Source: Lepidodermella squamata (lineage: Eukaryota; Animalia; Gastrotricha). Taken from it: 64,000 nucleotides of DNA. The stretch lies in NCBI GenBank assembly GCA_047495785.1, contig JBLDXI010000013.1, positions 3,472,001 to 3,536,000 on the forward strand. Direction: 5' to 3'. Positions 18,060-30,397 of this stretch are shown here, piece after piece. Below the pieces are notes generated by a model. The model was not told where the DNA came from. It worked only from the letters and a program-made list of their open reading frames with translations, and ran no database searches. The translations under genes were made by a program, and so were the position numbers. Numbering within the stretch: the stretch's first letter is position 1; the number at the start of each line of letters is the position of its first letter.

Positions 18060-21000
18060 GGATCTGGCTATTCGGACAGAGAATTGTGTGTCACGCAATT
18101 GCTATTCGGACACAGTGTGTTTGCGTGACTGGCTACTCGAACACAAGTGGTGTTATGTGGTGTGTGCGCGCTTTTGGCTATTTGAACACACGCTTTAAAA
18201 CCGATTAAGACACCATGTAACAAAGCGGAAACGGTTTATTAACCCATTTCTCTAGCCATTACTCAAAATACAAAAAAGAAACAAAAAACAGTAAGTTATT
18301 TTTTACGGTTGAAGGGCATTTGCGGCTTCCCTTTCATGCGACCAGAGTCCTTCCCTTGTTTAAAACTAAGGCCTTCACCTGGTAAGTAGTCAGTCGTTGT
18401 CGGGCGGAGAGGAACTAGTTCGACTTTGATTGCTGCACTTTTTCCTTTCTTCGGCTTGGACGGAAACCGGCTGAGCTGGCGATCGTTGAAACACTGCAAG
18501 AGGTGGTGACGCATGGCGGCCGGGTCGAAGACCACTCGAGTCGGGTCGTTACCCGTCAGAATTTCGACACAATACGCAATGGCGTAAACGCCGCAATCAA
18601 AGCCATTCGACTGCTGAGGCACCGGCAAGACGTGGACGCTGATGGCGCCGTCAACAGCATGCGCGGCGTATCGTTGGGTGATTTGAGCTTTCAGCGATTC
18701 GGATAACGGCCCGATCAGGCTGTTCATCAGTTTGACACCAGCCGGTAGCTTGCCGACGGTTATCGTCGTAGTGGCGACCCAGTGGTCCGACCCGCAATGA
18801 TGTAGTTGAACGGTTTCTGCAGTGGTAGGCGGAAACTGCAGTTGTGACAACAGCGGCGTAGCAGCATCAACGCCCTCGGCCCGCATCATGCTGAACAACT
18901 TGTTCGCCGCGTGCATGTGCTCGTCGCCCAGGTAGGTGTCGGTGCGCAGCACGAGGTAATCCTGCTCGCGCAAGCCGAGCTCGTCGGTGATTGGTCCCGG
19001 AAGTGACGAATGAGCGTCAGCGGGCGCACACGGCGCATCAAAGGCGGCGGGTTCCACCGGTGACTGTGTCGGCGTGTTGTTGATGTTGTTGTCACCCGGT
19101 GCCTGCTGCTGCTCGCCCGGCTGCTGCTGCGCGCCCGGCTGCTGCTGCTGATCCTGACGAGGCGTCGCTTCTTCATCACCCACCGGAAGGTCCTAAGAAA
19201 CCGGAAGGTTTAGTACACTCGCAAACAAAGCAATAAAACAAGATGTAATTACCTTCACAACGATTTCGAAATTTTTCTGGGCTCGAATCAAGTCAGCCAA
19301 CTTTTCCAATTGCGAATAGTATCTGTCGAAGACACGATTTGGGTGTTGCGAGGCGAGGTCAGCAATAACCAGGGTCAGCTGTGACATTTTTCGATAACGA
19401 CCGGCGTTATCAGCCGGTCTGCGCCCTGCTCTCGGCTTGAAAGTTGTTTCGGTGAATCTGTAGGCCGCGAATTCTGCGTCGAAATCGGCCTCAACCGGTC
19501 GAAAGTTGGCAGCGACTGGCTCGCCCCCGGTGACCGGGCGAATAAAATCATTGAAATACTTGCTGTGGAACAGCATCTTGTCAAACAACGGCTCTTCGTG
19601 CTTCGATCGTAAGAACAAGATGTGATGACACGGCATGGCCATGCTCATGTAAAACGTGCAGGAGCACTTGCTCGGCGTGGTATTATAGTCTGCCTGATCG
19701 CCATTTTCGAACTTTTCGCGAACACCAACGCCGTGAACCAAAGCCATTGAACGAGTAACGGATCGCTTCAACGAGCCGTGAAATTCCGCCAGGGCATAGC
19801 TAAAAAACAGCAATTTTACAAATTTGTCCACAAATTCTGAAAATAACTTACGATGAAATTTCGTAAGACGCTTTATCGAGCAATTGTTCAAACTGGTCAC
19901 CTCGGCGAACAGCGCGCTTCACAACGGTTTTCTCGGCCCGGCGGCGCTCGATAAACGAAATCAGAAACGGAATGAAAACTGGCATCGGTGGCTTGGTTGA
20001 GAAGCCGGCGCACATTTCTTCCTTCAAGGAGCCGAAAAATCGTTCAACGCGTCCAGTCGTGTTAGTGAGCATGATCGGGTAACTGCGGCGGGCGAAAAGG
20101 GCCCACATTTCGACGCAATTCAGCCAGTTGCGCTCGAAATAATCGGCCAACGGCTGCTCAGCCGTGCGCGCGATTTTCACGGTGACGTGCGGTTGAACCA
20201 GCGCACGCCAACTGCCGACGGCCGTTTCGAAAAACTCCTCGCGCTTAGAACCGACCATCGCCTTGAAACCGTCGAACACTTCGCACTTGAATTGCTGCAG
20301 GTCGTTGACTTCATTGTTTCGAATCGTAGCGATGACGTTTCTCATATACTTCAAGGCGTGGAAAATGCACAGCAAAATGATACAGTCCGGAAATATTTCG
20401 CGGAGTATGTCAATTTGATCAAAGTCTTTGTCAACGATAAAAAACCACGGCCCAGCGCCATACAAATTCTTGAACTCTTGCAGCATGGACTTGACATTTT
20501 GCGAGCGTTCGTCAGCTAGGAGAGACACGCCTGCGACTCGAGTGCCGCCAGTGAGAGGACAGACGTAAACAAACGTACACAGCTTTTATTTTTCAACATT
20601 TGTCTTGAAAGTCGTATCAAGTAAGATGGTGTTCGGCTTGAGCTTGTTCATGTCGTTAATCATCGACGGTGTCGCAATGAAGAGCACGTCGACGTTACCG
20701 TTCGCGTCACGGGTGGTGCGCACGATGCCGTCGCCCTCCTGCACAGCTGCCAGTGTCTCGTCCAGAACACGTCGGCTTTCGTCAGGGCTGATGCGGTGTT
20801 TCTGTAACAATAACGGCGTAATTAGCTAAATTCGGACAGGCATTAGGCTTATTTACCTGGGCTAAATTGTGAATTTGCTTGGCGGTGATGAGCTTGTTGG
20901 TTTCATTGCTCTCATGATGGGCGATCGTCGACGCTTTCGCATTGTTCTTCAAATGGGACAGGATCTCAGCCTTCTTCGCCTCGTCGAGTTTTCGGTTGAA

Positions 21001-21642
21001 ACAGTAGGTGGCGTACCGCTCCTCCGAGATGTCGTGGCTATGGCAGCGCACGACTTGGTTGATTTTCATCTGCCCGTCCTTCGTCGCAGTGCCGGTGATT
21101 TTTGCCGGACAAGCCAGGTAAGCCAAATTTTGATTCGGACGCTCGCCATTGGTGATTTGCGCCTTACGTTTATAGCCATGAGTACAAATGAGACGCAGAG
21201 CAGACTTGTCAGTGCCACGGCTGATAAACGGCTCCAAAGTTTGGTCCCGAAACCGGGGTAGCCAATTGTCCACGATGTAATCTCGAGACGGAAAAACGTC
21301 TCCTGGTTTTATACTAAGCTCACCTGATTCAGTAGACATTTCAGTAAACATTGTTTGAAAAGTTAAAAACCGGACTACCCAAGGCGCCCCCTTTTTATTC
21401 TGCGTTGTTACTCATCACTTCCGCTTTAATTACCGCTCAATAATCACCCAATCATTGCCTTATTAGCGGAATTACAGCGCGGCGCGGTGTGTGTTCAAAT
21501 AGCCGTTTCCGCGCACACACCGCTGTGTTCAAGTAGCCAATCACGCATACACAGTGTGTTCAAGTAGCCAAAAGCGCGCACACATTGTGTTCGAATAGCC
21601 ATTGCGTGACACACATTTCGGTGTGTCCGAATAGCCTCGTCC
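18060..21642 (-). mobile_element. Mutator/MULE DNA transposon, 3583 bp
   Basis: 9-bp TSD ATAAAAAAA (18051-18059, 21643-21651). Inverted ends GGATCTGGCTATTCGGACA / TGTCCGAATAGCCTCGTCC, with 4-5 subterminal GGCTAYTYGRACAC repeats per end. Confidence 0.93.
18296..21351 (-). pseudogene. MULE transposase fused to a Ulp1/C48 protease domain; in-frame nonsense codon at 20586-20588
   Basis: FAR1/WRKY-like C..C..HxH (ICTHG..ACPAKI..CHSH); DDE core LDTTFKTN, VDKD, CIFH, RVERFF; SWIM CSC..PCHH; Gln-rich linker; DHWVA..MNSL..QQSNGFDCGVYAIAY. Introns at ~20803-20856, 19800-19851 and 19193-19252 join the parts. TNVEK*KLCTF carries a TAA. Confidence 0.85.
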
Positions 21643-22224: not shown

Positions 22225-25200
22225 TCACCATGCAAGTTCTTTGTAGAAGAATGAAGTTGACCCGCTGCGCCACACCGCTAATTTTCTGATTTGATCGGCA
22301 GCCAGCAGTAGAATTGCAAATGGTATTGCCGGAACCCACCAGAAGCCTCTGATTGGCGCCATTCCGAAAGCATCATTCACCCCGGGGCAATAGCTTAGAA
22401 AGACTGCGACTCCCGTTTCAATCAGAATACCTACAATGAGTTTCCAATTCTTCCCTAAAAATGACAAGTTGAGATTTTCGAAAATGAGCTTAACAACAAT
22501 CTCACAGTCATGTTTCAAAACCGAAACTCGACGAGATTTACAGCATATCACGCAGAACCATTGCATTGTTATGATTGATAAGAAGTAGACTGAATTGAGG
22601 ACCTTCTCCAATTCTTTACGCTGCTGGTAAGTCCATTCTTGTCCATATGAATCTGTGAGATCGTTAACAGCTAAAACACAGCTTAAAGTTTCAAAAAGCT
22701 ATAATTTCAGCTGTTCAAGTACCTGATTGATCCCATTGGGATGTAAGTCGTGAGCTAAATACGTCCGAAGGCAGAAAGCCATTGTCAGCAAGGCAAACTA
22801 GGTAGGCTAAAAAGGCTCCTGCTACTTCAATGACTCCATTCTGACCATAAGCCACCGAAACAACCTTCCCGGTTACCAATCGATCTTTCTGAAAAAGAGC
22901 AGGTGGTTCAGAAGGGGCTATGACTTGCAGGAAGGCTATACCTTCAAACTTCGAGGTTTCCTTTTCATTATGTCGCTTTCAGCTCGTTCTGCGTGCAACA
23001 TCACAGCTGGGGCCATATCGGTAACCAAGCATACGACCAACATAGCCAGGGTACCCATCGGCTGTGGAACCCCGAGGACTACGAAAGCAATGGCGGCCGC
23101 AATTTCAGGAGGATTAGCCACCAGAATGTAACACAAAGTCTTAACCAAGTTATCGAACAAAAGTCGACCCTCTTCAATGGCATAGGCGATGGTTGCGAAG
23201 TTGTCGTCTAGTAGAATCATATCGGCGGCTTGTTTAGCGACATCAGCCCCGGATCGGCCCATCGCCACGCCGATGTCAGCTGTTTTCAGGGCCGGCGCGT
23301 CATTTACCCCATCTCCGGTGACAGCGACGATATTTCCCGCTCGTTGGAAAGCTTCGACTATCCTGAGTTTTTGCTGGGGTGATGTCCTCGCGAAGACGAT
23401 TTCCCAGTATCTTGACAACGAGTAATCCAACTCAACTGGAGACATTTCCCGGAGCTGATCGCCTGATATCACAAGAGCGTTGGGTTTTTCATTTGATCCA
23501 GCAAGTACATCGTCGGCAGTCTTCGAACTTTCAGTGAAAATGCCTACTTTCTTGGCTATCGCTTTTGCAGTGAAAGGATGGTCTCCAGTGACCATTGCTA
23601 TCCGTATTCGAGCCTCTCTGCATTTTCTCACGGCCTCAGGAACACCCGGTCTTGGTGGATCAATTAAAGAGATAAGGCCGAGAAACTTTAGCCCAGTTGT
23701 AGGGAAGTTACAAATGCCCTGAGTATGAAAGGCGTAAGTTACGGGGTATTGATCTGCTGGGAGAGCAAGCTCAGCGAAACCGAGAACCCTCTCGCCAAGC
23801 CCCCCGAGATGGCTGTAAGCTTCATTGACCCTCGCCTTGATCTCTCGAGTAATAGCCCAGTCTTTATCGTGCAATGAAATGGTTTCACACATCTCCATGA
23901 CCTTCTCCGGAGCCCCCTTAACAACAAGCAAGAAACCATTACCATCAGGGTTTTCATGAATTGATAACTGGAACCGATTAGTCGAATTGAACGGTATTTC
24001 AGCTCGCTTTGGCCATTTAGCTCGATAGCGTTCAACTGAACCAGTAACAAGTTCGCAGAATTTCAGCAAGGCTGATTCGGAACCATCTCCAAGGCATTCT
24101 CGCTCCATAACTGGTTTCGCTTCTTCGCCATATTTGAAAACAGCCCTCGAGCATAAAGTAGCAACTCGAATCAAGGCATCCCAGCTATCTTCTGATTTGT
24201 ACCTCAGAGCCATGTCAGCTTGAACAACTCTGTTACTCAGCCAAATGTTTGACACTGTCATTTTGTTTTGCGTCAAAGTGCCGGTTTTATCTGTGCAAAT
24301 CACTGAGGTTGAACCAAGAGCTTCAATCGCCTCAAGATGCTTAACCATAGCGTTTTGCTTAGCTAGTCGTTTAACAGCTATGGTTAAGCATAGGGTGAAT
24401 TCGATAATGACACCTTCTGGCACATTTCCGATCAAAATTCCGATAGCGAAAACGAAAGCTGCGATCCAGTTGCTTGTATCTCGGATGAGAATCACTGCCA
24501 GAAAGATTATTCCCATTGTAGCAGCGAAGCCGAAAATTACATAGACAAATCGTTGGATCTCCCGGGACAACGGCGAAGGTTTAGCCTCCATGCCTGTTGT
24601 TAGCCGGGCTAGCTTACCCATAAAAGTTTGACTGCCAGTGGCAGTGACAACCGCAGTAGCAGTGCCTTGAGAATGAAAATACTTCTGTCCGAAAACGAGT
24701 CGCAAGCAAAAGAATGGCATACCATCGATGATGAAAGTAGAGAAGAACACCATATTTTTGCTCTCAACGGGATTGTCGTGGGTACATTCGTGTGACAACG
24801 GTTTGGGCTCACTTTCGCCAGTTAAACAAGAATTGTCGACTCGCAGATTTGAACTCGCAAGAATGCGGCAATCGGCGGGTACTTTGTTACCGCCTGAGCT
24901 TTTTCAACAGTGAAAGGTGCATCTCAACGATTAAATGTTTGCTGCTTACTTTTCAGTTGGATCAAATCTCCTACGACCAGTTCCTCGACAGGTATAACTT
25001 TCCTTTGTCCCCCTCTAACCACGGTTGCGAATGTTGGAAGAAATCGATTGAAGGACTCGATTATTCGATTCGATTTAGCCTCTTTCAATTATAAAAAAGA
25101 GAGAGTTAAGGATGCTTGAATGGTAATGGATGAGGAAAGATTAACGAATAGGCTGATTGGGTAAAGACGTATGTTTCCTATTTTGCTCGCTAATTGACTC

Positions 25201-26504
25201 TCAGGTGTTGTTAAATTTCCACTCTCCCCTCTTGCACCAGTTTATTTGCCTCGGATCTCTGTTTTGATCATGCCACACGGTTCAACAGGCTAACACAAAT
25301 TACGGAACCTCTAAAATTATCTTGCACCTAGGAAAACTCGACGTCTGCTGACGGCTACTTTCCCAGGGAGCTTTTCCTGCGCAATCATATGATGCATTTC
25401 TATTTTGAGGTAATAATAATGTTGAGTAGGCAAAGTGAACTTAGACCTAATTATCCAGACGTTGAAGAGAGGGTCAAATCATATTGAACTCTTAATAATC
25501 CCTTATACTGGACTTGCTATCAAAACCCAGAAACAATGAGGGACATTAATTATTGTAGGCTAGTTTAGAGGTTAAACAGTACGTCCTACTTGGTCAAGCA
25601 ACGATTGATATCGACCTTGCTGTCGACTTTTTTGGAATTTTGCTACGTAACCATGATCACGATGCTTAGGAATAGAGTAAATCAGAACTCAGAGCCATTG
25701 GGAAAACCATCATTGAACTACGTAAGTCAGTCTCCAACGTCACAGGAATCTATCTTTGCTCAACGTGGAAAAGTTTGAAAGGTCATCAATGCGCCCTAAA
25801 ATTGCGTAAACATTCACTGCGGTAAGGATATTATGAGATAAAAGGCTACAAACTTATAAGTTACCTTGAGCATAGGAAAATGCAGATGTTATGAGAACTA
25901 CGCCAGCCAGGACGCATCCAAGATAGAGATTGTCGTTAGGAACAACGTTGCTCTGAGAATTTTGCAAGCCATACGCCGCAAAGCACAGGATTGAACCAAC
26001 CCAAAGCATCAAACAGAATCCACTGAACAGATGCCGCGAGTACTTCAACCATTCAGGTGCGGAAGGTGGCGGTCGGATGCGGTTCAAGCCGTTCGCATAG
26101 AGTCGCTCCTGAACTTCCGCTTCAATGAGCCCTCTGCTAACATTCGTCCCAAGTCTAGCGATCAAACTCGGTACTGATATCTTATGAATATCGCCCATTG
26201 TCTCTTGTTTCAGAGCTTCCACCTCAGCCGTTTTGCGGTTGCGCGTTAGCAAAGAACCAAAGAAGCCTTCGAGGAACCGTCGCCATAAGTGGCGTTTAAC
26301 ATGCCGCGGCGTGATCACGGAGTTTTGCCTACTCAGGATTTTAGCTCGTGCTTTATTAGCCTTGGGCCTCAAGCCTGCGAACGGATAGATTGTCTGGTGC
26401 ATCGATTCTCCCGGCGGGTGGATAACGATACCATGATCCTCGCTGTTCCGCGCCTGAAGCGCATTCGTCGATACTCGAATGTCGGGAACAGCGTTGTTGA
26501 TCAT
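22225..26504 (-). CDS. P-type IIC (Na+/K+-ATPase alpha-like) ATPase, divergent, 7 exons
   Basis: NDNLYLG, DNSCLTGESEP, NVPEG, ICTDKTGTLTQNKMTV, KGAPE, DPPRPGVPEAV, MVTGDHP, FARTSPQQKL, TGDGVNDAPALK, DSYGQEWTY, FLSYCPG. GT-AG introns can be placed at each gap; two short ones are in frame and read through in the ORF track. Confidence 0.95.
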
Positions 26505-28001: not shown

Positions 28002-30397
28002 TCAAGCCGGTGATGCTCTGAACGGTGAGGCTCTGAACTTCGAGGTAGTATCGATTCGCTCCAATTTGAAGTTGGAGATGGAATCGACTCGCCCCATTCC
28101 TAAGTTAGCCTTCGCCACGGCACCAAACATGAACACGCTAGTCGTCCCTGAGGAAATTAATGAGAAAGCGGAGGCGGCTATGTAACGATTCGTAGTCGAA
28201 CTGATAATGCCAATTATCATGAGTGACGCAACAAATATTGCCGTGGCATTAATTATCGCAAAATTGAGCCACTTAAACTCTGCGTCATTTTTCAGTAATG
28301 GATACCTCCTCCTTAGAACGTACATTAGAAAAACTGATGGTACCAGCGGCAAAATCAGGAAAGCAGCTAGAATGAGAAGCCACGTGGAAGAATTACTTGA
28401 GTAGCAAACGTTAACCAGGGTTGTGTAATAAGCATCTTCCTCGCGATCGTATACCGCAGATGAAGTCATATTGACCAACAAATGCTTCATCGGATCCAAG
28501 CAGAACCAAATTAGCAACGTAATAGCCACGGGGACAACAGGTAGGGAACATCGACCGAATGTGGCTAGACCAAATTTTGCGGCATGGTCGAAAGATTTGT
28601 CACTATTAGGCTTTAAGGCGCGGATATAGAGTAGTTGGTTCAATAATGAAGAATTAACGAAAGCAAGACCGATAGCAGTCAAAACGTGGGAAATGTAACA
28701 CGCCGCCGTTGAAAATGGGCTAGTTTCAATTGCGAAGAAAATCGCAGCGACATTAAGAAGGATGCACCCTAATAGCGTGAAATACTTCATGGGAGTCCAA
28801 ACTGAACTTTTCTTGAAAATGATCGCCGGAATACCCATCACGATTTCGACAACCGTCAACAAAATAGCAATCGTGATGACAGCTATGAAGTTTTCTCTTG
28901 GAACGTCATCGATCAAAACAATTCTTGGAACCGTATCGTTGGGAGGCTTCCCATCTGCAGTTCGCCATAGAGAGATCTCCTTCAATTTGTCAACGACATA
29001 GTCTTTCCCATTCTCAACATCACCTCCGACTCGACAGTGGATGTCGTAGATCAGTTGGAGGGATGACGTCTCCTGAGACCAGACTGATACATATTGCGGC
29101 TCATTGTCTAGTTCCAACCGGGATGAATATTTGGTATAACCAACTCTCAGACCAATATATTCAACCTTCCCAGCTGTTGCATTGGCGATCTTCATAACCT
29201 GCTCAGGCTTCTTTCCGAAGTCTCTCAGAGTCATGTTGTATTTGGCCAGATTGTTCTCAGTATCATGCAAGGTTACCACAGTTTGTAGCATGGCGTCGTA
29301 GCACTGATGTCGTCGGTGGAAGTCCGCATAGACTCTGTTTTCGGTGTAATTCGCGATCATTTGGTCCAACGAATCGACTGTGTGACCTAGTGTCGAGGTG
29401 ACGTTGCTTTCGATGGCGAACGACAGACCACCAAGCCAAAATGTGTACTTCAACTGCTCAAGAAGTACGGATTTCGGACATCCGGGTATTACCGGGTCTG
29501 GCAGTTTCGTCGGATCATTGAATGAAGATACCATGGCTAAAAACGCGTATCTTGGCCCTGTCATCCCAAGACCATAAGAGTAACACAGGAACTGAATGAT
29601 GTTGTCAGCTCCGTTGACGAAAACAGCTACAACTCTTGCATCGCTGTTACTCAGTGGCTCTAGAGCTTCGTTGGAGAACTTTTGAATCATGTCGTAGTAC
29701 ACAGCCGTGATGCCGAATTGACGAAGTTGGCTTTGAAAGTAGTTGACCATCGAATAATCCAGGAGACTGACAGTTGAGACAATCCCTATTCTCCGCCATT
29801 TACCAACATCTCGAATGAAGTTCAAATACGAAAAGCCGACCAGTTCACCCGGCAACCGGGTTCGGTATAAGTTACTGTACAGCCTTCTGTTGCCTGTGAA
29901 GAAATCAGAGGAGCATCCGTAACTTATCCCGACCATGTTTGTCTCATCGATAGCCGAAGCATAACCCTTACAACCTATAAAAGAGAATTATTATCGACTC
30001 TGTTAGTTAGGATCCGAAAGCTGTTACCTGTGCTCGTCCTTGGAGCAACCGTAACAACACTCTGATACACCGGCTTTGTAGCATTCGGCTGAAATAATGC
30101 GCCACTTTCGAACTTTTGCGAGTATGCAAAAAGTCGTCGAACAGCCATAACGCCATCATTTCGATCTTCATCCTGAAAATCGAGGGCAATTCTGTAGTTG
30201 GGCAGGATGTCTCTTCTTGAATTGACCGTATCTGCTACGATTTGCACCGCCGTTCGACAAATCATCGCATCACCGGGTTTCGACTCCATGAATGGAATCT
30301 GAACCAAGACTAGCAACGTGTCATCTTTACTTGCAGCACTTTGCTGTGCTAGCAAGGTGAACATCGAAAATACCAGCTTGATCGTCGAACTCATCAT
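28002..30397 (-). CDS. GABA-B-like class C GPCR, paralog 4; 2 exons
   Basis: ORFs 29975-30412 and 28002-29936 joined by GT-AG intron 29975-30027; collinear with paralogs 1 and 3, with a different C-tail ending FRASPFRASPA. Confidence 0.88.

What the first reader, a model, noticed from the sequence alone, without database searches (positions are those of the whole stretch)
22225..24430. Na+/K+-ATPase-like pump with intact catalytic core but rewritten ion-binding sites
Seen: TGES, DKTGT, TGDGVND, PEG and the beta-subunit SYGQ motif are intact. By-eye alignment to mammalian alpha1 (pig numbering): M5 YTLTSNIPE becomes YILVANPPE (T772I, T774V, S775A); M6 CIDLGTD becomes VVCLVTD (D804C, codon 23029-23031); M7 GMIQ becomes GVIE (Q854E); M8 QWAD becomes QWFC (D926C); the C-terminal KETYY becomes KELAW; M4 gains a Glu (PEGVIIE). 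Known: S775 and D804 coordinate the shared Na/K sites, D926 and the terminal tyrosines support Na site III, and H+/K+-ATPases differ here in another way (Lys at 775, Glu at 804). Inference: altered substrate or stoichiometry; two Asp-to-Cys swaps could point to a different cation, or to a non-pumping role.
Basis: partly seen in the sequence, partly recalled or inferred. Interest (0 to 1): 0.75.

Follow-up and report, generated by a model that had tools for sequence, protein, structure and literature searches.

The report
Sodium-pump paralogue with cysteine-lined ion pocket
A small freshwater invertebrate (probably the gastrotrich Lepidodermella squamata) transcribes and conserves a sodium-potassium-pump relative whose ATP machinery is intact but whose ion pocket is rebuilt, partly in the way seen in fungal ion-uptake pumps, so it probably moves fewer or different ions.

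Summary
A clean 7-exon, 1075-aa P2C (Na,K/H,K-type) ATPase alpha gene lies on the minus strand at 22225-26504. TGES, DKTGT, TGDGVND, PEG and SYGQ are intact. S775A, D804C, Q854E, D926C, T772I, T774V, a new M4 Glu and KELAW for KETYY are all real.

The gene is not decaying. cDNA-like contigs skip the predicted introns, and 26 of the 29 listed coding haplotype or strain differences are synonymous.

The same pocket is kept in four other old paralogues of this genome (58-83% identical, synonymous sites saturated). The scan had already noted those paralogues on other DNA (s1-387828, s1-398233, s1-422782); I re-derived this independently.

No protein with both cysteines appeared in two word searches or in an exhaustive profile search.

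New here:
- A large fungal family, inferred to be the type IIE/ACU high-affinity K+/Na+ uptake ATPases, shares Ala775, Cys804, Glu854 and a non-acidic 926. On present evidence this is convergent.
- Across P2C-like pumps, Glu854 goes with loss of Asp926.

Best reading: an active pump with altered stoichiometry or selectivity, and no canonical Na+ site III. A two-cysteine soft-metal site and a non-pumping role are less likely. Function is untested.

The parts
22225..26504 (-). Whole coding region of the P2C-type ATPase alpha-subunit paralogue (7 exons, 1075 aa, stop included)
   Evidence: Gene model. Pfam domains Cation_ATPase_N, E1-E2_ATPase, Cation_ATPase, Hydrolase and Cation_ATPase_C, exon by exon. 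TIGR01106 is the best NCBIfam family for the three exons scanned.
25865..26504 (-). Exon 1: ATG, about 90-aa N-terminal extension, Cation_ATPase_N, M1-M2
   Evidence: X1 contigs lie on it. A joint 25081->25865 skips the 783-bp intron with CT..AC ends, which is GT..AG on the minus strand.
24950..25081 (-). Exon 2 (start of the A domain)
   Evidence: splice joint seen in X1.
24723..24893 (-). Exon 3, with TGES at 24811-24822
22942..24665 (-). Exon 4: M3-M4, P and N domains, M5-M6. Holds PEG and the new Glu403 (24400-24402), DKTGT (24277-24291), TGDGVND (23299-23319), Ala831 = S775A (23116-23118) and Cys860 = D804C (23029-23031).
   Evidence: PDB best match is Na,K-ATPase alpha1 at 641 bits, ahead of ATP12A (622), ATP4A (605) and Ca-ATPases (328 or less).
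22723..22888 (-). Exon 5: M7 with Glu910 = Q854E (22826-22828)
   Evidence: The X1 loose end at 22890 continues into the end of exon 4.
22506..22670 (-). Exon 6: L7/8 SYGQ (22639-22650) and M8 QWFC with Cys984 = D926C (22552-22554)
   Evidence: The X1 loose end at 22672 continues into the end of exon 5.
22225..22454 (-). Exon 7: M9-M10, C-terminus KELAW (22228-22242) and TGA stop (22225-22227)

Best explanation
This is the alpha-subunit gene of an active P2C-type cation pump. It is one of five old paralogues with the same pocket, in a genome that is probably Lepidodermella squamata.

Shown:
- The phosphorylation, actuator and nucleotide motifs and the beta-subunit SYGQ motif are intact.
- The gene is transcribed, spliced and under strong purifying selection.
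- The pocket substitutions are fixed across the clade.

Inferred:
- The protein still runs the E1-E2 ATPase cycle but cannot do 3Na+/2K+.
- The canonical Na+-only site III is dismantled or rebuilt: D926C, Q854E, terminal Tyr-Tyr lost.
- The shared sites lose Asp804 and Ser775 but keep Glu327, Asn776, Glu779, Asp808, Gln923, Tyr771 and Glu954.
- It therefore most likely carries fewer alkali cations and/or protons per cycle, probably with little or no net charge.
- My favoured sub-guess rests on the parallel with fungal type IIE/ACU pumps and the freshwater habit: ATP-driven K+ and/or Na+ uptake, perhaps against H+.
For: - Open 7-exon model with all catalytic motifs.
- P2C membership: TIGR01106 is the best family for the scanned exons; PDB best hits are Na,K-ATPase alpha1, then H,K-ATPases.
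- Expression and splicing: X1 contigs have zero depth in the 783-bp intron, a joint that skips exactly it, and loose ends matching two more introns.
- Selection within the species: 26 synonymous against 3 non-synonymous among the listed coding differences.
- The same pocket in paralogues on C20, C1, C13 and C66, at 58-83% identity. Among them pS is 0.68-0.81 and pN 0.09-0.26; dN/dS is 0.054 for the closest pair.
- The five form a clade with 100% SH-aLRT support.
- Literature: the six acidic pocket residues and their sites (PMC5233988). Gln923 and Asp926 coordinate site III. Neutralising the Asp cuts Na+ affinity more than 100-fold without changing K+ affinity. Losing site III makes transport electroneutral. 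The Gln854-equivalent is a site-III residue. The C-terminal tyrosines cap the network leading to site III (all PMC9463140). S775 substitutions selectively disrupt K+ activation (title cited in PMC10812997).
- Parallel: 111 of 120 members of the fungal family around P0370 have Cys at 804, 113 Ala at 775, 111 Glu at 854 and 118 Asn at 926. By its spread in Ascomycota and Basidiomycota this should be type IIE/ACU, described as high-affinity K+/Na+ uptake ATPases (PMC1479386, PMC6651076).
- Glu854 goes with non-Asp926 in 41 of 43 representatives, against 28 of 61 for Gln854.
Against: - There are no functional data of any kind.
- Asp804 is treated as essential for Na+ and K+ coordination in canonical pumps (Pedersen 1997, title cited in PMC10812997), so the pocket might bind nothing.
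- Calling the fungal family ACU is inferred from taxonomic distribution. No named ACU sequence was available, and the founding paper (PMC387655) is not held.
- The parallel with that family is partial. Here Asn776 and Glu954 are kept, 774 is Val rather than Pro, 926 is Cys rather than Asn, and SYGQ is present.
- The transport mechanism and counter-ion of ACU pumps are themselves unknown.
- The organism's identity, and so its freshwater habit, is probable but not proven.
- The Glu854/Asp926 association is not corrected for relatedness.
Confidence: 0.55

Rival explanations
1. Non-pumping role. The protein keeps the fold and perhaps the phosphorylation cycle, but acts as a scaffold, receptor or regulator rather than a transporter, as proposed for C. 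elegans CATP-1.
For: Two of the six pocket acids and Ser775 are gone. [quoted passage not shown] The same genome holds other pump-derived non-pumps according to earlier scan notes, which I did not test.
Against: Every catalytic motif (TGES, DKTGT, KGAPE, MVTGD, TGDGVND) is kept in five paralogues whose synonymous sites are saturated. Twelve of the 19 pocket residues listed in PMC5233988, including four acids, are invariant or nearly so across the clade. That is unexpected if ion binding no longer mattered.
Confidence: 0.15
2. A pump for another substrate. The two cysteines create a soft-metal (Zn2+, Cd2+, Cu+) or otherwise new binding site.
For: Two Asp-to-Cys swaps plus an extra Cys in M8 (CVICCK), conserved in the clade. 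Thiolates favour soft metals (general chemistry).
Against: Asp804 belongs to site II and Asp926 to site III (PMC5233988), so the two Cys are not ligands of one site. I did not measure the geometry. The fungal Cys804 family has Asn at 926 in 118 of 120 members, so Cys804 does not need a second Cys. The other ligands are hard oxygen donors. The overall kinship is P2C, not P1B.
Confidence: 0.05
3. The Cys-pocket genes are not derived sodium pumps. They are true relatives of the fungal/holozoan Cys804 (type IIE-like) family, inherited or transferred, so the shared pocket is homologous rather than convergent.
For: Shared Ala775, Cys804, bulky 806, Glu854 and non-acidic 926. The AU test does not reject a tree that holds the five genes together with the Racocetra and Chromosphaera proteins (p = 0.13). 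A rotifer assembly (Brachionus) contains type IIE-like proteins.
Against: That constrained tree is 61 log-likelihood units worse than the free tree, and about 84 units worse than the best tree found, which unites all 11 paralogues of this genome. The five genes sit in an 8-gene clade of this genome with 100% support, alongside paralogues that have Asp or Pro at 804. Identity is about 50% to animal pumps and about 39% to P0370. SYGQ is kept here and absent in the fungal family. Intron positions are shared with the other paralogues.
Confidence: 0.05
4. Relaxed selection or an early pseudogene: the pocket changes are decay.
For: The window's copy is the most divergent of the five, with an end branch of 0.45-0.51.
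Against: Open frame, six GT-AG introns, transcription with correct splicing, a 26:3 synonymous to non-synonymous ratio, and a pocket identical in old paralogues.
Confidence: 0.02

Closest known systems
Animal Na+,K+-ATPase alpha subunit (P2C; pig alpha1, PDB 3WGU/7E1Z; canonical copies in this genome on C13 at about 1.33 Mb)
   Same: Same domain order and all catalytic motifs, SYGQ, Trp924, Cys930, Pro778, and 12 of the 19 pocket residues. About 50% identity. Best PDB and NCBIfam matches.
   Different: Asp804 and Asp926 are Cys, Ser775 is Ala, Gln854 is Glu, Gly806 is Val, there is an extra Glu in M4, and the terminal Tyr-Tyr is lost. It cannot form the canonical three Na+ sites.
Fungal type IIE / ACU ATPases (high-affinity K+/Na+ uptake). 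The family around Racocetra P0370 is assigned to this type by its taxonomic spread, not by a named reference sequence.
   Same: Ala at 775, Cys at 804, a bulky hydrophobic residue at 806, Glu at 854, a non-acidic residue at 926, no terminal Tyr-Tyr; M6 reads I-I-C-x-x-T-D in both.
   Different: Only about 39% identical. The fungal family has Pro774, Gly776, Ser954 and Asn926 and lacks SYGQ. The trees favour separate origins, although the AU test is not decisive.
Gastric and non-gastric H+,K+-ATPases (ATP4A, ATP12A)
   Same: P2C pumps that have lost a working Na+ site III and carry fewer ions per cycle; ngHKA is 1H+:1K+ and electroneutral (PMC9463140). Second-best PDB matches.
   Different: H,K pumps keep Asp926 but neutralise it with Arg949. 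They put Lys at the 775 position and Ile at 924 (PMC9463140). This protein has Ala775, Cys930 and Trp924, and removes the Asp itself.
Other divergent invertebrate alpha paralogues: C. elegans CATP-1 to -4, Artemia alpha2KK (PDB 8K1L), and unstudied copies in spiders, springtails, bdelloid rotifers and the sponge Ephydatia
   Same: Lineage-specific Na,K-ATPase-like paralogues with altered pocket residues. The Ephydatia paralogue P0264 also has Cys804 and Glu854.
   Different: None of those retrieved combines Cys804 with Cys926.

Membership tests
P-type ATPase superfamily, type II | DKTGT phosphorylation motif, TGES actuator motif, MVTGD and TGDGVND hinge motifs | tested here: met
   All are present in the translated exons and invariant in the five paralogues.
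P-type ATPase superfamily, type II | Domain order Cation_ATPase_N / E1-E2_ATPase / Cation_ATPase + HAD hydrolase / Cation_ATPase_C | tested here: met
   Pfam scan exon by exon.
P2C (Na,K / H,K type; TIGR01106 ATPase-IIC_X-K) | Best family and structure match is P2C rather than P2A, P2B or P2D | tested here: met
   TIGR01106 scores 735.9, 118.2 and 58.5 bits for exons 4, 1 and 7; the next family scores 345. The whole-protein cut-off of 946 could not be applied because the joined protein was not scanned. In the PDB, Na,K alpha1 scores 641 bits against 328 or less for Ca-ATPases.
P2C (Na,K / H,K type) | Falls inside the animal P2C clade in a tree | tested here: met
   It lies within the 32-row animal group (97% SH-aLRT). 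The best tree found unites it with this genome's canonical copies.
P2C (Na,K / H,K type) | Beta-subunit dependence (SYGQ in L7/8; beta genes present) | tested here: inconclusive
   SYGQ is intact and the genome has 8 or more beta-like loci. Binding itself was not tested.
Canonical 3Na+/2K+ sodium pump | Six acidic pocket residues E327, E779, D804, D808, D926, E954 | tested here: not met
   D804 and D926 are Cys; the other four are kept (residue list from PMC5233988).
Canonical 3Na+/2K+ sodium pump | Ser775, Gln854 and the C-terminal Tyr-Tyr | tested here: not met
   Ala831, Glu910 and a C-terminus ending in Ala-Trp.
H+,K+-ATPase | Lys at the 775 position, Arg at the 930 position, Ile at the 924 position | tested here: not met
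   Ala831, Cys988 and Trp982 (features taken from PMC9463140).
Type IIE / ACU ATPase | Pocket signature Y-L-x-P-A-G-x-x-E, I-C-x-x-T-D, Glu854, Asn926, Ser954 | tested here: inconclusive
   It shares Ala775, Cys804 and Glu854, but has Val774, Asn776, Cys926 and Glu954.
Type IIE / ACU ATPase | Groups with the fungal family in a tree | tested here: not met
   The free trees separate them. The constrained tree is 61 lnL units worse, but AU p = 0.13, so it is not formally rejected.
Nematode CATP paralogues | Orthology to catp-1 to catp-4 | not tested
   No CATP sequence was among the named hits. The papers read give only identities among the CATPs (PMC11631496).

The most novel reading that the evidence does not exclude
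The five Cys-pocket genes are an animal counterpart of fungal ACU pumps. They would be P-type ATPases that use ATP directly to take up K+ and/or Na+ from very dilute fresh water, perhaps in exchange for H+. They would have arisen from the sodium pump by convergent rebuilding of the same pocket positions (Ala775, Cys804, Glu854, no Asp926). The Cys804/Glu854 paralogue of the freshwater sponge Ephydatia would be a second animal case.
Probability: 0.2. Interest if true: 0.8.

Novelty: new variant of a known kind. Interest (0 to 1): 0.6.

Why it matters
Which residues set the ion selectivity and stoichiometry of P2C pumps is an active question, studied so far with engineered mutants such as the four changes that turn ngHKA into a Na,K pump. 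Here evolution offers a long-conserved, five-fold replicated alternative pocket on a sodium-pump scaffold. The same genome also holds canonical copies and intermediate forms: C19 has only T332Q, T772I and Q854E, and C55a/b have Pro804 and Cys779.

The partial match to the pocket of fungal uptake ATPases gives a concrete, cheap test: yeast K+-uptake complementation and oocyte flux. If the guess holds, it would reveal a way for freshwater animals to acquire ions that I know of no description of. Even if the uptake guess is wrong, the natural D804C/D926C/Q854E combination shows which pocket configurations are viable.

Tried and rejected
1. The top word-search hit, Notodromas P0001 (860 bits), looked like an orthologue. 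It is a canonical pump with an internal assembly duplication.

2. The search for orthologues with the Cys pocket found none.
- Whole large ORF.
- M5-M6 region alone.
- Exhaustive profile search of 1.84 billion representatives.
- These libraries appear to hold no gastrotrich proteins (the window's own protein is absent), so this says little about other gastrotrichs.

3. dN/dS between paralogues is unusable except for the closest pair, because synonymous sites are saturated. I used haplotype and strain differences instead. Only 40 of 121 differences were listed, which is a caveat.

4. The mixture-model (PMSF) tree did not finish in two 300-s runs, so I used LG+G4. The quick free search missed a better tree, so deep placements are provisional.

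5. The AU test of Cys clade plus fungal Cys804 rows gave p = 0.13, which is not decisive.

6. Confirming the ACU identity by name failed. No hit carries that name and the founding paper PMC387655 is not held.

7. The binding sites were not modelled. The joined spliced protein may not be sent to the fold, complex or database tools, and the fold tool returns no coordinates. That step was left out. The joined model was used only inside my own scripts (translation, local tblastn on fetched loci, alignments, trees). All database, family, PDB and profile searches were done exon by exon or ORF by ORF, by reference.

8. Complex prediction with a beta subunit was not run, because binding is not a claim I rest on.

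9. The neighbouring genes show no functional link: a class C GPCR upstream and a MULE-type transposon-like element downstream.
Full report
**What is in the sequence.** The minus strand between 26504 and 22225 holds a seven-exon gene: 26504-25865, 25081-24950, 24893-24723, 24665-22942, 22888-22723, 22670-22506 and 22454-22225. All six introns are GT-AG. Five are 51-57 bp and one is 783 bp. The joined frame is open for 1075 codons.

Exon by exon, Pfam finds the full P-type ATPase domain order. NCBIfam ranks TIGR01106, the Na,H/K type IIC alpha subunit, first for each of the three exons scanned: 735.9, 118.2 and 58.5 bits, with the next family at 345. The closest solved structures are Na,K-ATPase alpha1 (641 bits), then ATP12A (622), ATP4A (605) and Artemia alpha2KK (602). 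Calcium pumps score 328 or less.

A note on procedure: the joined protein was built and used only inside my own scripts. Every database, family, structure-bank and profile search used single exons or ORFs by reference. No fold or complex job was run on the joined model.

**Check of the observation.**
- Intact: TGES, DKTGT, MVTGD, TGDGVND, PEG and SYGQ.
- M5 is YILVANPPE (T772I, T774V, S775A).
- M6 is VVCLVTD (D804C at 23029-23031, and G806V).
- M7 has Q854E and M8 reads QWFC (D926C).
- The protein ends KELAW.
- M4 reads PEGVIIE, with a Glu at the T332 position, preceded by V322I and A323G.

Of the 19 pocket residues listed for pig alpha1 in the Na+-bound state (PMC5233988), 12 are kept and 7 are changed. 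Of the six acidic ones, E327, E779, D808 and E954 are kept.

**The gene is alive.** Run X1 (2015, labelled "RNA?") gives short contigs that lie on exons only.
- Depth is zero across the 783-bp intron.
- One contig joins 25081 to 25865 with CT..AC ends, which is exactly the predicted intron.
- Loose ends at 22672 and 22890 continue into the preceding exons, confirming two of the short introns.

Run X2 (2024) carries the assembled haplotype and a second one. Of the 40 differences listed for the two runs, 29 are in the coding sequence. Of these, 26 are synonymous and 3 are not (K708T, A703V, M571I, all in the cytoplasmic domains). The second-haplotype contig over 22970-23463 has 11 differences, all synonymous, so M5 and M6 are unchanged in it. 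Only 40 of 121 differences were printed, so the ratio is a sample.

**The organism.** The genome has 121.2 Mb in 151 contigs. The published Lepidodermella squamata assembly has 122 Mb in 157 contigs (PMC11660948). Earlier scan notes guessed a gastrotrich. The canonical pump copies group with flatworm, nemertean and brachiopod sequences. I take it as probably L. squamata, which I know as a freshwater species; this identification is not proven.

**A gene family, not a single oddity.** A six-frame search of the genome finds about eleven P2C alpha genes. I fetched them and read their pockets.
- Two tandem copies on C13 near 1.33 Mb are fully canonical and end in YY.
- The copy on C19 differs only by T332Q, T772I and Q854E.
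- Two copies on C55 have A323G, T332E, N776S, E779C and D804P; one of them has Gly at 926 and the other is unaligned there.
- The copy on C54 is more remote (D926N).
- The window's gene and four others (C20, C1, C13 at 1.55 Mb, C66) share I/V322, G323, E332, I/V772, V774, A775, C804, V806 and C926. All but the C66 copy also have E854.

These five are 58-83% identical. Their synonymous sites are saturated (pS 0.68-0.81) while pN is 0.09-0.26; the closest pair gives dN/dS 0.054. All are interrupted only by short GT-AG introns, several at shared positions. None of the eight non-canonical copies ends in Tyr-Tyr.

The scan's earlier agents had reported these paralogues from other windows with the same conclusion (s1-387828, s1-398233, s1-422782, and s1-407651 for what are probably the C55 genes). 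My result was reached before I read those notes and agrees with them.

**Phylogeny.** FastTree on 128 rows and IQ-TREE (LG+G4) on 43 rows both give the five Cys genes as a clade, and the eight non-canonical genes as a clade, each with 100% support. Both lie inside the animal P2C group but outside the canonical animal clade.

Constraining all eleven genes of this genome to one clade gives a tree 22.5 log-likelihood units better than the free quick search found (p-AU 0.71). So the best tree in hand has the whole family arising inside this lineage from an ordinary sodium pump, followed by fast change. The mixture-model run did not finish, so deep placements remain provisional.

**Relatives elsewhere.**
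- Word search with the large ORF gave only canonical-type pumps at 50-54% identity.
- The best-scoring hit, from Notodromas, is an assembly duplication.
- A search scored on M5-M6 alone gave no protein with Cys at 804 among the hits.
- An exhaustive profile search with the five paralogues against 1.84 billion representatives gave, among the best 150, Asp at 804 in 128, Cys in 8, and none with Cys at both 804 and 926.
- The Cys804 representatives are a paralogue of the freshwater sponge Ephydatia muelleri (also E779K, Q854E, D926N), proteins of the ichthyosporean Chromosphaera and the fungus Racocetra, one from an unnamed EukProt transcriptome, one from a Logan run assembly, and three from metagenomes.
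- Other divergent animal paralogues turned up in a spider, a pseudoscorpion, a springtail, beetles and a bdelloid rotifer.

These libraries appear to contain no gastrotrich proteins, so absence elsewhere is weak evidence about other gastrotrichs.

**The fungal parallel.** Searching with the Racocetra protein recovers a large family across Glomeromycota, Mucoromycota, Zoopagomycota, Blastocladiomycota, Ascomycota and Basidiomycota. In 120 members the pocket is nearly fixed:

| Position (pig alpha1) | Residue in the fungal family | Count of 120 |
|---|---|---|
| E327 | Glu | 109 |
| T772 | Leu | 118 |
| T774 | Pro | 118 |
| S775 | Ala | 113 |
| N776 | Gly | 120 |
| E779 | Glu | 119 |
| D804 | Cys | 111 |
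| G806 | Phe or Leu | 116 |
| D808 | Asp | 120 |
| Q854 | Glu | 111 |
| Q923 | Gln | 120 |
| D926 | Asn | 118 |
| E954 | Ser | 110 |

The five fungal members whose ends I printed finish in Ala-Trp, and the family has no SYGQ.

[quoted passage not shown] PMC6651076 describes ACU ATPases in the same way and counts them in many ascomycetes. I therefore infer that the ascomycete and basidiomycete members found here are type IIE/ACU. No named ACU sequence was available to confirm this.

The gastrotrich clade shares Ala775, Cys804, a bulky 806, Glu854 and a non-acidic 926 with this family. It keeps Asn776, Glu954 and SYGQ, and is only about 39% identical overall.

A tree forcing the two groups together is 61 units worse than the free tree and about 84 worse than the best tree, yet the AU test gives p = 0.13. 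Convergence is the better-supported reading but is not formally proven.

**A wider pattern.** Among 125 representatives aligned at both positions, Glu at 854 goes with a non-Asp at 926 in 41 of 43. Gln at 854 goes with a non-Asp in 28 of 61 (Fisher p = 4e-8, not corrected for relatedness). PMC9463140 names the residue equivalent to Gln854 (ngHKA Gln873) as a site-III coordinating residue. The pair D926C plus Q854E may therefore move the carboxylate within the site-III region rather than simply delete it. This is inference.

**How it most likely works.** Published mutagenesis and structures supply these facts:
- Gln923 and Asp926 coordinate the Na+-only site III.
- Neutralising that Asp lowers Na+ affinity more than 100-fold without touching K+ affinity.
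- Eliminating site III makes the pump electroneutral.
- The C-terminal tyrosines cap the hydrogen-bond network that reaches site III (all PMC9463140).
- Ser775 substitutions selectively disrupt high-affinity K+ activation, and Asp804 and Asp808 are Na+ and K+ coordinating residues (titles cited in PMC10812997).
- A pump with sites I and III disrupted still binds Na+ at site II and is phosphorylated (PMC10812997, title).

Against this background, a protein with intact catalysis, no Asp926, no Tyr-Tyr, no Ser775 and no Asp804, but with Glu327, Asn776, Glu779, Asp808, Gln923, Tyr771, Trp924 and Glu954 conserved, is best read as a working pump with fewer or re-specified sites. It cannot be a 3Na+/2K+ exchanger.

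The parallel with uptake pumps of fungi, and the need of a freshwater animal to gather ions from dilute water, make K+ and/or Na+ uptake (perhaps against H+) my favoured guess. I put that at about 0.2. I put the general statement (active pump, altered stoichiometry or selectivity) at about 0.55.

**Rivals.**
- A non-pumping role has a precedent in CATP-1 (title cited in PMC11631496). It fits poorly with conservation of all catalytic motifs and most pocket residues over saturated synonymous distances.
- A soft-metal site made by the two cysteines is unlikely. Residues 804 and 926 belong to different sites, and the fungal Cys804 family has Asn at 926.
- Decay is refuted by expression and selection.

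**Surroundings.** Upstream on the same strand lies a class C GPCR ORF (28002-29936). Downstream lie ORFs with FAR1, MULE/ZSWIM and Ulp1-protease matches (18296-21351) in a GC-richer stretch, which looks like a Mutator-like element. Neither suggests a functional link.

The genome also has at least eight beta-subunit-like loci, three of them in tandem on C14.

**Verdict.** This is a new variant of a known kind of pump, replicated five times in one genome and partly convergent with fungal type IIE pumps. It is worth a bench test, and its function is still unknown.

Noticed in passing
window 18296-21351 (-): A run of ORFs with weak FAR1 DNA-binding, MULE/ZSWIM RNaseH-like and Ulp1 (C48) protease matches, in a GC-richer stretch (0.49-0.51 against about 0.42). 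It is probably a Mutator-like transposon or a gene derived from one, directly downstream of the pump gene.
   Followed up: partly
window 28002-29936 (-): A 644-aa ORF with 7tm_3 and ANF-receptor domains: a class C GPCR gene upstream of the pump gene.
   Followed up: partly
L018 and L007 (G000:C55 about 557-571 kb): Two tandem alpha paralogues, 82% identical, with a different rebuilt pocket: A323G, T332E, N776S, E779C and D804P. One has Gly at 926 and the other is unaligned there. They end in FL and YL.
   Followed up: partly
L019 (G000:C19 about 2.18 Mb): An alpha paralogue that looks like an intermediate. Its pocket is canonical except T332Q, T772I and Q854E, and it ends in YF. It groups with the rebuilt copies.
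   Followed up: partly
L020 / L010 (G000:C54 about 4.256 Mb): The most remote alpha paralogue. It reads DKSGT instead of DKTGT in the tblastn alignment, and has D926N and E954R. Its gene model was not refined.
   Followed up: no
G000:C14 505-512 kb, plus C144, C13 at 4.03-4.07 Mb, C24 and C12 (L021-L030): At least eight Na,K-ATPase beta-subunit-like loci (PF00287), three in tandem on C14. The beta family seems expanded along with the alpha family.
   Followed up: no
P0264 (Ephydatia muelleri Em0006g213a): A freshwater-sponge alpha paralogue (697-aa fragment) with D804C, E779K, Q854E and D926N. This is a second animal case of Cys at 804.
   Followed up: partly
P0452 and P0460 (Brachionus calyciflorus): Two proteins in a freshwater rotifer assembly belong to the fungal type IIE-like family. 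They are 49-50% identical to Racocetra P0370, have pocket YLxPGG..E and Ser at 804, and end in AW. Contamination, gene transfer or a true animal member are all possible.
   Followed up: no
P0001 (Notodromas monacha): The top word-search hit owes its score to an internal duplication of about 200 residues in the deposited protein. This is probably an assembly or annotation artefact.
   Followed up: yes
window 24511-24832, run X2: There are two haplotype contigs of similar depth (63.9 and 56.6). One is identical to the window and the other has 25 differences and 4 indels in 322 bases. Much of this stretch is intron, which points to high heterozygosity in the sequenced sample.
   Followed up: no
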